Assembly: GCA_020891255.1 (NCBI GenBank)
Contig: BQFW01000011.1
Span: 1,116,001 to 1,180,000, forward strand
Direction: 5' to 3'
DNA from: Entomortierella parvispora E1425
Lineage: Eukaryota > Fungi > Mortierellomycota
DNA length: 64,000 nucleotides
Position numbers and translations under genes: made by a program. The notes under the pieces are model-generated. The model did no database searches and was not told the DNA's origin. It worked only from the letters and a program-made list of their open reading frames with translations. Position 1 is the stretch's first letter. Each line of letters begins with the position of its first letter. Shown one piece after another: positions 54,861 through 60,540 of this stretch.

Positions 54861-56916
54861 TTAGGCCTTAGACTGAAGAGCCTTGAGCTTGGCCTCCAAA
54901 CGGGCGCCCCATTCCTTGTCAGCACGCTTGATGTGTCCGACCTGGCGCTCCTGGAGGAAGGTTTTGGCGTTCTTCAAGTGACCAGCCATGTTGTCAATGA
55001 GGTCCGACTTCTCCTCGGCACTCATCAAGCGGTACAAGTTACCAGGTTGGACAAAGTCCTCGTCCGACAACTGGATGATGTGACGAGCAGCAATGGCGTT
55101 CAACTCGAAAGAAGAGTAAGTGTTGGCGACAGCAGTTTGCTTGGCACCTCCGAACGAGTTAGGCTCGTAGTTGGGGGCAGATCCACCGTTGCCATTGATG
55201 GACATGGCACCATCGCGCTGCTGGTTGGCAATGCGGGCATTGTAGGCAACATTGACAGGGATCTGCTGGTAGTTAGTGCCGAGGCGGTGGCGGTGGGTAT
55301 CAGGGTAGGAGAAGAGACGTCCCTGCAACATGCGATCGGTTGAAGCCTCAATACCGGGAACCATGTGCGAAGGAGAGAAAGCAGCCTGCTCGACCTCAGC
55401 AAAGTAGTTGTCAGGGTTGCGGTTAAGGACCATCTTTCCGACGGGGATCAAGGGGTAGTCCTTCTGGGACCAGACCTTGGTGACATCGAAGGGATTCCAG
55501 CGGTAGGTGGCAGCATCCTTGGGGTTCATGACCTGGACATGGACAGACCAGGAGGGGAAATCACCCTTGGCAATGGCGTTGAAGAGATCGGCGGTGGCGT
55601 AGTCGGGGTTGGACGAGGCGAGCTTGGCGGCCTCGGCAGCCTTGAAGTTCTTGATGCCCTGGTCGCACTTGAAGTGCCACTTGACAAAGTGAGACTCACC
55701 AGCCTCGTTAACGAGCTTCAAGGTGTGGGAGGAGAAACCGTGCATGTGACGGTAACCATCAGGGGTACCACGGTTAGAGAAGAGGATCGCGACCTGGTGC
55801 AGGGTCTCGGGGACAAGGGAGATGAAGTCCCAGAAAGCATCAGGATCACCGCAGTTGGTTTGGGGGTTACGCTTCTGGGTGTGGATGAAGTCGGGGAACT
55901 TGATGGGGTCACGGCTATTGAGAGACAACGAAGACACTTTGTTAATGACCTTCACGCGTCGTATTGTTGGATGAAATGCAGCAGCCATCGAAGCTGACTC
56001 GCCATGGAGATCAAGCTTTGTACTCTCCGGGACTGGCGAACCATCAAGGATCCCGGTGTCACATGTGATTTGTAGAGCACATTTCTATCCTTTCCGTGCC
56101 GTTTTCAACCTTGCTTTGCTGAATTGTCCCGACTGTTTCGTTCAATCCAAGCGCTTCACTGCAAATCCTGCATTTGGGGGACAGGGGTACTTACATGAAG
56201 AAGACAGGGGTGTTGTTTCCGACCATGTCCCAGTTACCCTCCTCAGTGTAGAACTTGACGGCAAAACCACGAGGATCACGGGCGGTATCAGCAGAACCCT
56301 TCTCACCTCCGACGGTGGAGAAACGAGTGAACAAGGGAGTGCGCTTGCCAACGCGGTTCAAGAACTTAGCCTTGGTGTACTTGGAGATGTCGTGAGTGAC
56401 CTCAAAGTATCCGTGAGCTCCAGCACCCTTGGCATGGACAACACGCTCGGGGATACGCTCACGGTCAAAGTGGGACAACTTGTCAATGAGGGCAAAGTCT
56501 TGGAGGAGGCTAATAGATGAACAAGGACGAGTAGTGGGTTGAGTCGTTGTTTGTATACAGGCACTCCCTTGGATCGGATTCCGGAAGAATAAAGAAGAAA
56601 CTCGCTAAAGCGACAGGATGTGAACATCCTCAAAATCCACAGCCAGCCACTGCGCTTGTTGTATCTGGCACAAGGTTGACCAAGGCTCCTGGTTGCCATG
56701 TTCGGGCTGTCAACCAGGTAGGAAAGCTAGCAACAAAGAAACGAGCGGGCGGGCGAGCCTTTTTCGTTGTATTCGGTTGTCCGTGGGCACAAAGTCAGAT
56801 GGGCAGGTGTGAGAGCCATTAACAAGAACTTACATGGGACCATACTGACCAGCAGTGATGGAGTTCTGGTTATCCTCGACGGGGTTTCCGTTGGATGTGG
56901 TCAGAGTAGAGGCCAT
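54861..56916 (-). CDS. CTA1: Monofunctional small-subunit heme catalase, 483 aa
   Basis: Exons 56916-56834, 56509-56195, 55914-54861. [51 protein letters not shown]. Confidence 0.96.
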
Positions 56917-57366: not shown

Positions 57367-58926
57367 TTATTTCCCTGCTGCTTTCTTGTTTGATTTCTTG
57401 TGGGCACTTTTGTGCATCTTGTTGTTTTTCTTGCTTTGACGCTGAAGAGCCGCCTTGGAGGCACTCTTCCTCTTGTATCGCTGTTGCCGGGATGGAGGCT
57501 GCTGTTTCACTGTGAAGATGCGACCATTGTCAATATTCTGACCGTTGGTGTTTTGTGTGATGATTTGAATGCTAACAAGGTTCCGAGGACCAAGAACTAC
57601 CTTCTTTTGTTCCTGCTCATCCTGCTCGAATTGGACCATGGTTGTTGTCACTGAAACTGGGACCTGGTTGTTCCGCTTTGAAACCAAGGTACCCTCATCG
57701 TCATCTTGGCTTCTGCTGCGCTTAGCGCGGACATTCTTGATGTGCGTAGAGGCCACCTTCTTGTACTTATTATCATGTGAGTTGTAGGTCTTAGTGGTCT
57801 TGGAGTTGTCGTTCACATTGCTGATGCTCATAGAGTCTCCCCCGAACAAGAGCCCTCTGCGCATCAACGAAGGTTCAGGATTCTCAGCTCGTTTCTCATC
57901 ATTTGAGTGATACTGTTTTAACTTTGCGATGCGGTTTCCATGCGAGTTGTAGGTCTTGGTGTTTTTGGAGTTATCATTGATATTGCTGATGGTCATGGAG
58001 TCCCCGCCAAAGAGGAGGACTCTTCTTTCGACCTGGGGCTTTCCAAAATCTTCAACAGTGGCGCGCTTTTCAAAGTTGCCAGGCTGGTGACGATGGCCGC
58101 TCTCTCGGTATTGATACACCTTAGAGACTCGGGTGTTCTTGTTGCCATATGACTTGTACGTCTTTGTGGTCTTGGAATTGTCGTTGACATTGCTGATGGA
58201 TGTGCTCTGACCTCCCCAGAGAAGTCCTCTTCGGCCTAAGTTCAACTTGCTCGCTGCATTTTCGGTTTCTTGCTGCAAATAGTCACGACGTTCAAAGAAG
58301 TCTTCGGGCGCCATGTCATCGTCTTCTTTATGACCATCACGAGACGCCTTGTGAATCTGGGTGATAGATGTGTGGACGTTGCCATGTTGGTTTATGGCCT
58401 TTTTGTGCTGAGAGTTATCGTTGATGTTCTCGATGCTGGTACTGTCGCCTCCAAAGAGATCACCAAGCAGGCTACGGCGGTCAATGGTTTTCTTCTTGTT
58501 CACTTTGTTGATTTGAGTTTTTCGGTTGCCATGTTGGTTCATGGTCTGGGCGTGCTGCGAGTTGTCATTAACGTTCGAAATTGTGGTGCTATCTCCACCA
58601 AAGAGGTCTCCGAGCAGGCTTCGACGAGCTGGAGCTTGAGATATAGATTCGGTATCAACATCGGAATCGAAGCGCTTGTCCAAAAGGCCACCATCAACGA
58701 AGAGCCCATTGCGAGTCTCGGAATTGCCATTGTGATCAACTCGATAGGTTTTTTTCCCAACAGAGTTGTCCACCATGTTATTAACCGTGGTTTCATCACC
58801 GATCAGCGTACGACGGTCGACATCTACGTTGTTGCCATCGAGTTGGATTGGTGCGGCTTCCAGAGCTTGCAGTTGTGCCAGGGCGGCACTGGCAACGAGG
58901 AGCAGAGAAAGCGATTGAAACTTCAT
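57367..58926 (-). CDS. Secreted Kex2-processed repeat precursor (KEP-like) with six Asn-rich repeats, 519 aa, intronless
   Basis: Signal peptide MKFQSLSLLLVASAALAQLQALEA; 13 KR/RR sites; repeat xLLFGGDSxxISNVNDNSxxxxTxNxHGN; no Cys; Lys-rich C-terminus. Confidence 0.85.
   Translation of the reverse strand: MKFQSLSLLLVASAALAQLQALEAAPIQLDGNNVDVDRRTLIGDETTVNNMVDNSVGKKTYRVDHNGNSETRNGLFVDGGLLDKRFDSDVDTESISQAPARRSLLGDLFGGDSTTISNVNDNSQHAQTMNQHGNRKTQINKVNKKKTIDRRSLLGDLFGGDSTSIENINDNSQHKKAINQHGNVHTSITQIHKASRDGHKEDDDMAPEDFFERRDYLQQETENAASKLNLGRRGLLWGGQSTSISNVNDNSKTTKTYKSYGNKNTRVSKVYQYRESGHRHQPGNFEKRATVEDFGKPQVERRVLLFGGDSMTISNINDNSKNTKTYNSHGNRIAKLKQYHSNDEKRAENPEPSLMRRGLLFGGDSMSISNVNDNSKTTKTYNSHDNKYKKVASTHIKNVRAKRSRSQDDDEGTLVSKRNNQVPVSVTTTMVQFEQDEQEQKKVVLGPRNLVSIQIITQNTNGQNIDNGRIFTVKQQPPSRQQRYKRKSASKAALQRQSKKNNKMHKSAHKKSNKKAAGK
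57718..58809 (-). repeat. Six coding repeat units starting at about 58809, 58620, 58473, 58227, 58020 and 57855
   Basis: Each unit starts immediately after RR and shares the GG(D/Q)S(T/M)(T/S)I(S/E)N(V/I)NDNS core; unit 0 is a diverged version (TLIGDETTVNNMVDNS). Confidence 0.9.
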
Positions 58927-59058: not shown

Positions 59059-60540
59059 CGCGGCCACCGATCGGGCAATGCATCCGGCAACCATTGCTCA
59101 ACAGCCTTTTCTCTTAGTACTGGTCGCTGGTTGAGCATCCACTCCAAACATCAGACCACAGAAACTCTCACACACACAAGCACGCGTAGGTCTATTTACT
59201 AACTGACCCCCACCGCCAAGAGAATTCTCGATACTGATGCTCATACAGAGGATCCTCGCGTGTTTTCTTGGCACGGAGGTCCCTGTTAAAGTGGGAGCGC
59301 GTTCATCTAGCCCTTTTGAGAGATAAAACGTTGTATTTCAAAGGAAAACAAAATGACCTCCTTGCTAGGAGATGCCAAGCCATTTATTTTATAGTTGAAG
59401 GAGCTATGTATACCGATGATGGCGTCAAACAAATGCATGGGGAAGGAAGCTTCCTGTGAAGTTTTCTTGGCAGGGATAGCGGACCCCGGGGAATGCTTGG
59501 CAGGCTACTCGAGCGTGGTAAACCGCAGATAGCTCCATGGTGCGAGATATGGTGTCACAGGTGGTGCAGTGGGATTCCACGTACGTTTTAACTTCTGCTG
59601 TGGTCGATCCCAAAGCGACGCGCGCTTTTCTTTTTTTTTTTTTTTTTTTTTTTTTCAATTTTCAGGGACGGTGCCCCCTTTTGTTCCCTCCCTGACACGC
59701 CTGCCTCTCCAGGAAAAGTTCCCTTTTTCCCTGTGATCAGCAATTTGAGCATAGTGGGATCGCACAATGGGACAAGAATCACTTGTCAAGCGTGAGTGGA
59801 GCATCCTTCTGTTATGTCCTTGTCTGTCCCCTGCTCTCCATAGGTTTAGTGTAGCTCGTGGGTTGTCTCCCCCCCCCCCCCCCTTTCTGCTGTCTGGTGC
59901 ATCCACACAGGATCGCGTCTCCCCTTTTGTGTCCCAAGCATTTAATCGTGCATGCGAGTGCATCACACCACAGCAGACCCTCCTCTATTTTACACCATAG
60001 CAACTATTCACAATCCGGGATGCACCACTTCAAGAGTGGAGGTCCCAAGAAACAGAAGAGGAAAGGAGAAGGGGGAGGGGAGTAGAGATTAAGGGAGAGA
60101 GGGAGGGGAGGCGACGACCAGGGAGTGAGAAAATGAAGAGCTGATTCAGCTCGCATCTCTTTCATTTACTCATTCATTAGGCCCCAAAGTGTCATTGCAT
60201 TCGTTCCTTGTCATCACTTGTTCCCTCTTTCTCCCGAGTTGTCAGCTCGTGGACTCGTCCAAGCCCCTTTTCATTATTCGTCCTCATAGAGCACGCGCCT
60301 ACCAATTATTGTCTTTCGTCATCTGAACACCTCTCTTGGATCATTCTTTCCTCGCTCTCGTTCTTTTCTTTCTTCGTCTCCCTGATACTCCCTCTTTTCC
60401 GCTCCATCTGCCGATCCGCGGTGACTAATTGACTGTAAAAGAATCAAGAGAAAGAGGGTATGGGTGGTTTTCTCTTTCTTACGATGACTTGTGCAACACT
60501 CTCATCTCATCGCAATTCCTGCATGCTTTAGGAATCAAAT

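What the first reader, a model, noticed from the sequence alone, without database searches (positions are those of the whole stretch)
57367..58926. Secreted Kex2-processed precursor of six Asn-rich, amyloid/beta-solenoid-like peptides: candidate new fungal surface-fibril system
Seen: signal peptide; no Cys; 13 KR/RR sites, 11 with aliphatic, aromatic or basic P4 (VDRR, LDKR, IDRR, FERR, LGRR, FEKR, VERR, LMRR, VSKR, RAKR, RYKR). Cores such as SLLGDLFGGDSTTISNVNDNSQHAQTMNQHGNRKTQI and GLLFGGDSMSISNVNDNSKTTKTYNSHDNKYKKV each begin right after RR and are mostly separated by acidic spacers. Each core has a hydrophobic cap, an alternating strand (T-I-S-N-V-N-D-N) and a second N-x-H-G-N strand. Established: Kex2 prefers aliphatic/basic P4; Ustilago Rep1 is a Kex2-cut repeat precursor whose peptides form amyloid-like surface fibrils; curli and HET-s use Asn/Gln ladders and xGN arcs. 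Inference: the released peptides self-assemble on the hyphal or spore surface, or act as lytic/signalling peptides. No DUF3328 or other RiPP tailoring gene is in the window, which favours a structural over a RiPP role. I do not recognise a named family.
Basis: partly seen in the sequence, partly recalled or inferred. Interest (0 to 1): 0.88.

Follow-up and report, generated by a model that had tools for sequence, protein, structure and literature searches.

The report
Mortierellaceae secreted multi-peptide precursor
This gene encodes a secreted protein, found only in Mortierella-type soil fungi, that looks built to be cut into five or six conserved asparagine-rich peptides of 42-61 residues; the cutting pattern is a known type, and what the peptides do is unknown.

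Summary
Window 57367-58926 (-) is one intact 519-aa ORF with a signal peptide and no Cys.

It carries five canonical Asn-rich cores, a divergent N-terminal copy and a degenerate C-terminal copy. The gene is the syntenic ortholog of a family found only in Mortierellaceae. No Pfam or PDB relative was found.

Across the family, 134 of 137 cores sit directly after [KR]R in a fixed register. P4 is hydrophobic in 127 of these and P1' is almost always Gly or Ser. Cutting in silico gives mostly basic 42-61-aa peptides alternating with 9-17-aa acidic spacers.

dN/dS is 0.07 in the cores and 0.24 in the spacers. None of the 52 Asn lies in an N-glycosylation sequon (8.3 expected).

It meets every published sequence criterion for a Kex2-processed repeat protein (KEP), so it is a new family within a known class.

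The amyloid/beta-solenoid reading is not supported. AlphaFold2 gives a disordered chain with low-confidence hairpins and no solenoid. That reading is not excluded either. No cleavage, expression or function data were obtainable. The scan also flagged two other KEP candidates elsewhere in this genome; I did not check them.

The parts
57367..58926 (-). Whole single-exon ORF, 519 aa plus stop: secreted repeat precursor
   Evidence: overall dN/dS 0.15 against a 78%-identical ortholog
58876..58926 (-). Signal peptide, aa 1-17, ending A-L-A
   Evidence: sequence features; conserved in orthologs; modelled as helix 4-20; coordinates checked
58810..58875 (-). Short pro-segment, aa 18-39, ending V-D-R-R
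   Evidence: R39 is invariant in alignment A2
58672..58809 (-). N-terminal variant core, aa 40-85 (TLIGDE...VDNS...VDHNG...), acidic, ending L-D-K-R
   Evidence: Includes several columns invariant in all 33 aligned proteins; fragment pI 4.7
58474..58620 (-). Canonical core 1, aa 103-151, long-cap type (SLLGDLFGG...NVNDNS...)
58285..58473 (-). Canonical core 2, aa 152-214, long-cap type, with an acidic extension ending F-E-R-R
58063..58227 (-). Canonical core 3, aa 234-288, short-cap type (GLLWGG...)
   Evidence: clusters with the same-position core of M. alpina
57889..58020 (-). Canonical core 4, aa 303-346, short-cap type
57718..57855 (-). Canonical core 5, aa 358-403, short-cap type (GLLFGG...)
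57469..57672 (-). C-terminal module, aa 419-486: Thr-rich strand, acidic stretch, then a degenerate core copy (NLVSIQIITQN...)
   Evidence: Conserved in the M. alpina and Actinomortierella orthologs and in the second paralog group; dN/dS 0.069; highest pLDDT in the model, blocks of 53-62
57367..57468 (-). Lys/Ser/Asn-rich basic tail, aa 487-519 (pI 11.6, charge about +12), plus stop codon
   Evidence: present in only part of the family
58621..58671 (-). Acidic spacer 1, aa 86-102. The other spacers are at 58228-58284, 58021-58062, 57856-57888 and 57673-57717
   Evidence: pI about 4.1 for every spacer; dN/dS 0.244 for spacers and other non-core sequence

Best explanation
The gene encodes a Mortierellaceae-specific Kex2-processed repeat protein (KEP).

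Shown from sequence: a signal peptide sends the pre-pro-protein into the secretory pathway. The mature part consists of conserved units, each placed directly after a [LFIVM]-x-[KR]-R site.

Inferred: the Golgi kexin cuts after each such site, and a Kex1-type carboxypeptidase trims the C-terminal basic residues. This would release five canonical peptides of 42-61 aa. Each has a hydrophobic Gly-rich N-terminus ([SG]LL..FGG), an invariant NVNDNS segment, a T-x-N-x-H-G-N segment and a basic I-T-K-x-H tail. An acidic N-terminal variant peptide and a C-terminal module with a polybasic tail would also be released. The 9-17-aa acidic spacers would be by-products.

The peptides are predicted to be unglycosylated and unstructured as monomers. 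They would act outside the cell through the conserved Asn-rich segment.

Which extracellular role they have is not resolved. Conditional on cleavage, I rank self-association at the wall or surface and diffusible signalling about equal, and antimicrobial action lower.
For: - Architecture. There is a signal peptide and 13 [KR]R sites against 5.8 expected. Every core starts right after RR.
- Family-wide register. In 134 of 137 cores from 48 proteins, [KR]R lies in a fixed register before NVNDNS, 12 or 15 aa in 111 of them. P4 is L/F/I/V/M in 127 of the 134. P1' is Gly or Ser in 98% of 88 aligned cores.
- Site context. P4 is hydrophobic at 65% of all 560 [KR]R sites and at 78% of isolated ones. 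The figure is 17% for KK, 15% for RK and 21% for background.
- Second site class. A conserved F-F-D-[KR]-R site closes many units, followed by an acidic spacer.
- Fragments. In-silico cutting gives mostly basic cores (pI 8.3-9.9) alternating with acidic spacers (pI about 4.1).
- Selection. dN/dS is 0.074 in cores and 0.244 in spacers. Eleven of 13 dibasic sites are kept in a 78%-identical ortholog.
- Copy number. It varies from 1 to 7 by whole-unit duplication, with positional orthology of older units.
- Fold. No stable fold is predicted for the intact chain: pLDDT 41.7 by AF2 and 0.44 in the ESM Atlas.
- Glycosylation. There are no N-x-S/T sequons among 52 Asn (8.3 expected). In 88 aligned cores there are 19 against 117 expected.
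- Class criteria. It meets the published KEP criteria: signal peptide, at least 3 repeats, KR/RR/KK sites between them, and repeats covering at least 15% of the length (PMC6339444).
- Weak lead only. Protein-language-model neighbours include alpha-factor and apidaecin precursors.
Against: - No experimental evidence of cleavage, secretion or even transcription could be obtained. No RNA run was listed.
- A conserved RR at a repeat boundary need not be a protease site. A phage structural protein has RR at the equivalent position of a superficially similar repeat.
- The family counts are not independent, because the cores are homologous.
- The C-terminal ends of the peptides are less sharply defined than the N-terminal ends. 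The next [KR]R lies 11-69 aa after NVNDNS.
- I did not verify the kexin gene in this genome. I rely on the report that KEX2 is found in nearly all fungi (PMC6339444).
Confidence: 0.72

Rival explanations
1. The reader's reading, which is a sub-hypothesis of the KEP model. After cleavage the peptides self-assemble into amyloid-like fibrils on hyphae or spores and stand in for hydrophobins, as Ustilago Rep1 repellents do.
For: - The architecture and peptide sizes parallel Rep1: 652 aa, 12 repeats, ten peptides of 34-53 aa, and amyloid fibrils in the wall (PMC3133707).
- Conserved positions alternate in the strand-like segments: I-x-N-x-N-x-N and T-x-N-x-H-x-N, with conserved Gly.
- Asn is kept free of glycosylation sequons.
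- Distinct core subtypes are conserved side by side and could co-assemble.
- A survey found no canonical hydrophobin in the one Mortierellales genome it sampled (bioRxiv 10.1101/2022.08.19.504535).
Against: - AF2 gives no solenoid or stacked cores, only low-confidence hairpins.
- The peptides are strongly hydrophilic, with GRAVY -0.9 to -1.4. Only the N-terminal cap of about 7-10 residues is hydrophobic.
- An invariant Asp inside NVNDNS, and the nearby Lys residues, would stack like charges in an in-register sheet (inference).
- There is no match to the curlin, HET-s or chaplin families.
- Core spacing is irregular at 49-82 aa.
- The same preprint cites a hydrophobin reported in M. elongata.
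Confidence: 0.22
2. Also a sub-hypothesis of the KEP model. The peptides are diffusible signals, hormone- or pheromone-like, read by a receptor. Several copies per precursor raise the dose.
For: - There is a single syntenic locus with very strong conservation of the peptide across at least ten genera.
- The peptides are soluble and predicted to be unstructured as monomers.
- The best-known KEPs are alpha-type pheromones, and KEPs of early-diverging fungi are proposed to be signals (PMC6339444).
Against: - Sexual signalling in Mortierellales is attributed to trisporic acids (Schimek 2003, as cited in PMC3834313).
- Peptides of 42-61 aa are long for fungal signals. The 9-24-aa class is the most abundant in Dikarya (PMC6339444).
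- No receptor candidate is linked to the locus.
Confidence: 0.22
3. Also a sub-hypothesis of the KEP model. The peptides are antimicrobial or membrane-active defence peptides. The acidic spacers neutralise them until they are processed.
For: - Basic cores alternate with acidic spacers, as in many multi-peptide antimicrobial precursors (general knowledge). An apidaecin precursor cluster appears among weak feature neighbours.
- Cleavage would expose a hydrophobic Gly-rich N-terminus.
- The producers are soil fungi that live among bacteria.
Against: - Net charge is modest (+1 to +5, and -7 for one unit) and hydrophobicity is low.
- Sequence conservation across genera is extreme, where defence peptides usually diversify.
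- dN/dS is 0.07.
Confidence: 0.12
4. The protein is not cleaved between repeats. It works as an intact, disordered secreted or wall-bound repeat protein. The RR residues are part of the repeat for structural or binding reasons, and the basic tail holds it on the wall.
For: - The conserved C-terminal module and polybasic tail look like an attachment element.
- A phage fibre-like protein keeps RR at the matching position of a similar repeat, where no kexin is involved.
- There is no direct evidence of cleavage.
Against: - The full Kex2 context (hydrophobic P4, frequent acidic P3, small P1') is kept at both ends of the units. KK and RK pairs lack it.
- Accessible sites of this kind in a disordered secretory protein would be expected to be cut in the Golgi (inference from established Kex2 biology).
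- Spacers evolve about three times faster than cores.
Confidence: 0.15
5. The core repeat derives from a phage or bacterial fibre repeat acquired by horizontal transfer, as shown for the InaZ-type ice-nucleation gene of Mortierellaceae.
For: - The only hit outside Mortierellaceae among 1.84 billion representatives is a phage protein with 38-aa repeats (E 1.7e-6). Its contig carries an SU10-type capsid gene.
- Profile-profile comparison gives probability 84.6% over 33 ungapped columns, including the RR.
- There is a precedent for bacterial-to-Mortierellaceae gene transfer (PMC12978214).
Against: - The HMMER score is the sum of nine near-identical weak matches. The best single repeat scores 15 bits, with an independent E of about 1e3.
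- Relatives of the phage protein score lower still.
- The phage repeat starts with a helix-like D-A-L-L-x-x-K motif, where the fungal core has G-G.
- There was no hit in the phage genome collection.
Confidence: 0.03

Closest known systems
KEX2-processed repeat proteins (KEPs), as defined by Le Marquer et al. 2019 (PMC6339444) and Umemura 2020 (PMC7329392)
   Same: It has a signal peptide, at least three internal repeats, KR/RR sites between the repeats, and repeats covering about 40% of the length. The neighbours include no tailoring enzyme, as in the non-RiPP KEPs. Those surveys counted 8-11 KEPs in the Mortierella genomes they sampled.
   Different: The repeat sequence matches nothing outside Mortierellaceae. 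NVNDNS does not occur in the held text of either survey's supplements, or in any searchable paper. The units are long (42-61 aa) and far more conserved across genera than typical KEP peptides.
Ustilago maydis Rep1 repellent precursor (PMC3133707)
   Same: It is a Kex2-cut polyprotein that yields about ten peptides of 34-53 aa plus a larger C-terminal product.
   Different: No sequence relationship was detected. The profile search of 1.84 billion proteins returned only Mortierellaceae proteins and one phage cluster. Amyloid formation is demonstrated for Rep1 and untested here. Rep1 is from a basidiomycete and this family is from an early-diverging lineage.
Saccharomyces MF-alpha1-type pheromone precursors
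   Same: Tandem peptide copies lie behind KR sites in a secreted pro-protein. This was a weak feature-space neighbour.
   Different: There is no Ste13-type X-A or X-P dipeptide after the cut. The peptides are 3-4 times longer. Mortierellales mating is attributed to trisporoids.
Curli CsgA and HET-s-type beta-solenoid amyloids
   Same: Asn/Gly positions are conserved in strand-turn-strand-like segments, and conservation alternates along the strands.
   Different: There is no family match and no predicted solenoid. Repeat spacing is irregular. Charged residues are invariant inside the putative strand.
Mortierellaceae InaZ-type ice-nucleating proteins (PMC12978214)
   Same: They are secreted, repetitive, Thr/Asn/Ser-rich proteins from the same fungal family.
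   Different: They have 23-42 tandem 16-residue repeats with TxT, SLT and YGS motifs, confidently modelled as a beta-solenoid. This protein has 5-7 irregularly spaced 40-aa cores and no solenoid model.

Membership tests
KEP (Kex2-processed repeat protein) | N-terminal signal peptide | tested here: met
   MK, then a 13-residue hydrophobic run, then A-L-A. It is conserved across orthologs and modelled as helix 4-20. No dedicated predictor was available.
KEP (Kex2-processed repeat protein) | At least three internal repeats | tested here: met
   Five canonical copies, one variant and one degenerate copy.
KEP (Kex2-processed repeat protein) | KR/RR/KK sites between the repeats | tested here: met
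   Every core is preceded by RR. Family-wide the figure is 134 of 137.
KEP (Kex2-processed repeat protein) | Repeats cover at least 15% of the protein | tested here: met
   Five cores of about 40 conserved residues in 519 aa is about 39%. The criterion is from PMC6339444.
KEP (Kex2-processed repeat protein) | Actual cleavage by kexin and release of the peptides | not testable with these tools
   This needs peptidomics or a kexin mutant. No RNA or proteome data could be reached.
Rep1-type repellents | Sequence relationship to Ustilago Rep1 | tested here: not met
   The profile of 88 cores, searched against 1.84 billion representatives, returned only Mortierellaceae proteins and one phage cluster. 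Rep1 itself could not be fetched for a direct comparison.
Rep1-type repellents | Peptides form surface-active amyloid fibrils in the hyphal wall | not testable with these tools
   AF2 monomer models are disordered. No multimer prediction or wet test was possible.
Curlin / HET-s beta-solenoid amyloids | Match to the family profile, and regular stacked strand-turn-strand repeats | tested here: not met
   No Pfam match in the query or in 33 relatives. No solenoid in the AF2 model. AF2 is a weak test for amyloid states.
Dikaritin-type fungal RiPP precursors (ustiloxin-like) | A DUF3328/UstYa tailoring gene nearby, and short core peptides | tested here: not met
   The neighbours are Pho88, an F-box/LRR protein, catalase and an O-fucosyltransferase in four genera. 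The cores are 42-61 aa.
InaZ-type fungal ice-nucleating proteins | Tandem 16-residue repeats with TxT/SLT motifs forming a beta-solenoid | tested here: not met
   The repeat length and motifs differ, and the AF2 model shows no solenoid.

The most novel reading that the evidence does not exclude
The released Asn-rich peptides are functional amyloid or repellent analogues. They would coat Mortierellaceae hyphae in place of hydrophobins. The conserved C-terminal module and its polybasic tail would act as a wall-bound anchor or nucleator. This would be an independent invention of a Kex2-fed surface-fibril system in an early-diverging fungal lineage.
Probability: 0.18. Interest if true: 0.75.

Novelty: new member of a known kind. 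Interest (0 to 1): 0.45.

Why it matters
Mortierellaceae are abundant soil and rhizosphere fungi. They are used industrially, and some promote plant growth or host endobacteria. Almost nothing is known about their secreted peptides.

This is a single syntenic gene kept across at least ten genera. Its core is nearly invariant, it avoids glycosylation sites, and its cleavage signature is clear. That makes it one of the cleaner candidates for a functional KEP-derived peptide in early-diverging fungi, where the KEP surveys left the role of such proteins open.

The predicted N-termini give an exact target for peptidomics. If the peptides prove to be structural, they would be a hydrophobin substitute. 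If they prove to be signals, they would be the first peptide signal described in this lineage.

As it stands, this is a well-defined family of unknown function within a known class.

Tried and rejected
1. Ice nucleation. The Thr/Asn-rich repeats, and the known ice nucleation of Mortierella, suggested this. I rejected it because that activity is assigned to InaZ orthologs with 16-residue repeats (PMC12978214).

2. Phage or bacterial ancestry of the core. The one outside hit (P0053) is a phage protein and aligns in register, including the RR. However, its HMMER score is the sum of nine near-identical weak repeats, the best scoring 15 bits. Its relatives score lower, and the phage genome collection gave nothing. 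I treat it as chance or convergence.

3. The sub-threshold Pfam hits (Phage Tail Collar in the query, LysM1_NFP_LYK in five relatives) are below cut-off and inconsistent across the family.

4. A PDB profile search gave no hits.

5. ESM Atlas searches on the whole protein, one core and the C-terminus gave nothing above 0.74. These are leads only.

6. Transcript evidence. No RNA run was listed and only DNA runs hold the gene.

7. Literature. No paper contains NVNDNS or the assembly accession. No paper combines Mortierella with the phrase 'Kex2-processed repeat'. Three listed papers mention both Mortierella and Kex2, but their titles and abstracts are unrelated to this family and I did not read them.

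8. RiPP reading. There is no tailoring gene at the locus in four genera.

9. PIR-type wall proteins. I considered these because of the V-S-I-Q-I-I-T-Q motif. There was no Pfam match.

10. TANGO/Waltz-type amyloid predictors and AlphaFold-multimer were not available, so they were not run.
Full report
**What is there**

Window 57367-58926 (minus strand) is one uninterrupted 519-codon ORF. It is identical to the deposited gene model on GCA_020891255.1, contig BQFW01000011.1.

The product starts with a typical signal peptide: MK, a hydrophobic run, then A-L-A. It has no Cys and is 10% Asn. Shuffling the mature sequence gives 5.8 +/- 2.2 such sites (P = 0.002).

Five canonical cores begin directly after RR, at residues 103, 152, 234, 303 and 358. 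A divergent sixth copy begins after RR at residue 40. The family alignment shows a seventh, degenerate copy in the C-terminal module.

**Family and distribution**

A word-indexed search of 5.8 billion proteins found 47 relatives. Every one that carries a name is from Mortierellaceae and is annotated as hypothetical: Podila, Linnemannia, Mortierella, Haplosporangium, Entomortierella, Actinomortierella.

A profile of 88 cores was searched against 1.84 billion cluster representatives. It returned only 16 proteins. These added Dissophora, Gamsiella and another Entomortierella, plus a single non-fungal cluster.

No Pfam family reaches its cut-off in the query or in 33 relatives. The profile has no relative in the PDB.

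The gene sits next to a catalase gene, with Pho88 and/or an F-box/LRR gene on the other side, in this genome, M. alpina, Actinomortierella and Podila. These are orthologs at one conserved locus. No tailoring enzyme accompanies the gene.

A second paralog group has one or two cores plus the same C-terminal module. It occurs in Linnemannia, Haplosporangium and several unnamed Mortierella species.

**Evidence for processing**

- Register. Across 48 proteins, 134 of 137 cores have [KR]R in a fixed register before the invariant NVNDNS, 12 or 15 residues in 111 of them. P4 is L/F/I/V/M in 127 of the 134, and P3 is often acidic.
- Column conservation. In the 88 aligned cores, P1 is Arg in 100%, P2 is Arg or Lys in 100%, and P1' is Gly or Ser in 98%.
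- Site context. Of all 560 [KR]R sites in the family, 65% have a hydrophobic P4, rising to 78% for isolated sites. The figure is 17% for KK, 15% for RK and 21% for background.
- Second site class. A conserved F-F-D-[KR]-R site closes many units. An acidic stretch follows, then the next L-[DE]-R-R.
- Fragments. Cutting the query at every [KR]R gives cores of 42-61 aa, mostly basic (pI 8.3-9.9). They alternate with 9-17-aa spacers of pI about 4.1.
- Selection. Against a 78%-identical metagenomic ortholog, dN/dS is 0.074 in the cores, 0.069 in the C-terminal module and 0.244 elsewhere. Eleven of 13 dibasic sites are retained.
- Copy number. It ranges from 1 to 7. A tree of cores shows old units conserved by position across genera, plus recent whole-unit tandem duplications.

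This is the published definition of a KEP: signal peptide, at least three repeats, KR/RR/KK sites between them, and repeats covering at least 15% of the length (PMC6339444). The two KEP surveys counted 8-11 KEPs in the Mortierella genomes they sampled. They neither name nor show this motif in the text that is held, and no searchable paper contains NVNDNS.

**Structure**

AlphaFold2 with the 33-sequence alignment gives mean pLDDT 41.7. There is no global fold. Each core is drawn as a low-confidence hairpin: a strand through I-S-N-V-N-D, a turn at N-S, then a strand through T-M-N-x-H-G-N. The best-scoring region (pLDDT blocks 53-62) is the small C-terminal module. There is no stacking of cores.

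A single core modelled with 88 aligned cores has pLDDT 56 and no secondary structure. The ESM Atlas model of the same protein has pLDDT 0.44. Cores are spaced irregularly, 49-82 aa apart. An intramolecular beta-solenoid is therefore unlikely. Any ordered assembly would have to form between released peptides.

Two features bear on that possibility:

- Conservation alternates along the segments (I20, N22, N24, N26, then T32, N34, H36, N38 in alignment columns). This fits strands with a conserved polar face.
- The protein has no N-x-S/T sequon among 52 Asn, where 8.3 are expected. Family-wide the count is 113 against 365 expected, and in 88 cores it is 19 against 117.

The sequon result argues that the Asn side chains must stay free. 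It also argues against a heavily N-glycosylated wall mannoprotein. The family counts are not independent, because the cores share ancestry. Neither feature separates an Asn-ladder assembly from receptor binding.

**Function**

I commit to the processing model at about 0.7. What the peptides do afterwards is open.

- Repellent-like self-assembly. For: the close parallel with Ustilago Rep1 (ten peptides of 34-53 aa that form wall amyloids; PMC3133707), and the sparse record of hydrophobins in Mortierellales. Against: the strong hydrophilicity, the invariant charged residues inside the putative strand, and the absence of any predicted assembly.
- Signalling. For: the extreme conservation at one locus, and the soluble, disordered monomer. 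Against: the peptide length, and the trisporoid mating system of Mortierellales.
- Antimicrobial action. For: the alternation of basic peptide and acidic spacer. Against: the low charge, the low hydrophobicity, and dN/dS of 0.07.
- No cleavage. An uncleaved, wall-tethered disordered protein remains possible at roughly 0.15.

**Leads that failed**

The one non-fungal profile hit is a phage structural protein. Its contig carries an SU10-type capsid gene. Its 38-aa repeats align to the core without gaps, including the RR. The score is the sum of nine near-identical weak matches, the best at 15 bits. Relatives score lower, and the phage genome collection gave nothing. I treat this as chance or convergence. 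It is also a caution that RR at a repeat boundary is not by itself proof of a protease site.

Ice nucleation was considered and rejected, because that activity in Mortierellaceae belongs to InaZ orthologs with 16-residue repeats (PMC12978214). No RNA run holding the gene was listed, so expression is unverified.

**Verdict**

This is a real, strongly constrained gene. It is a new, lineage-restricted family within the known KEP class, with an unusually clear cleavage signature and an unusually conserved, sequon-free, Asn-rich core.

Its amyloid surface-fibril interpretation is an untested possibility rather than a finding. The scan's notes also list two other KEP candidates and a kexin-like prodomain elsewhere in this genome. 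I did not examine them.

Noticed in passing
L006:3711-6194 (protein P0064; P0053 is the representative of the same 90%-identity cluster): A metagenomic phage protein of 827 aa, next to an SU10-type capsid gene. It has ten 35-39-aa repeats with consensus YRRAYVDAL..KQNTISNLADTSKY. They align without gaps to the fungal core, including the RR (hhalign probability 84.6%). The HMMER significance comes from summing nine weak repeats, so I judged it chance or convergence.
   Followed up: yes
Proteins P0036-P0048 and P0051 (Linnemannia, Haplosporangium, unnamed Mortierella spp.): A second paralog group has only one or two cores. It has the same conserved Thr-rich plus RRNLV(S/T)IQ C-terminal module and a long basic tail. 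The UniRef label 'Pal1-domain-containing' on two of them has no support: Pfam found nothing in the one I scanned (P0051).
   Followed up: partly
Proteins P0007 and P0023 (Haplosporangium, Podila): These deposited gene models carry a Pho88 domain at the N-terminus. They are probably erroneous fusions with the upstream Pho88 gene, which is the conserved neighbour at this locus.
   Followed up: partly
window 54861-56520 (-): A catalase gene (Pfam Catalase plus Catalase-rel), split by introns, lies immediately downstream. It is the conserved neighbour in all five loci examined, though it is on the opposite strand in Podila.
   Followed up: partly
window about 59600-59660: There is a long homopolymer-like A/T run in the 1.6-kb intergenic region between this gene and the divergent F-box/LRR gene. 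It shows up as poly-Lys and poly-Phe ORFs on the two strands.
   Followed up: no
same genome, other pieces (scan notes s1-176296, s1-192330, s1-201102): Earlier first-stage notes list two more Kex2-repeat precursor candidates and a stand-alone kexin-like prodomain elsewhere in this genome. None was examined here.
   Followed up: no
window 57469-57672 (-), aa 419-486: The C-terminal module is as constrained as the cores (dN/dS 0.069). It is the best-scoring region of the AF2 model, drawn as four short strands. In the query its internal dibasic site has become P-R, so it may stay attached to the preceding Thr-rich strand.
   Followed up: partly
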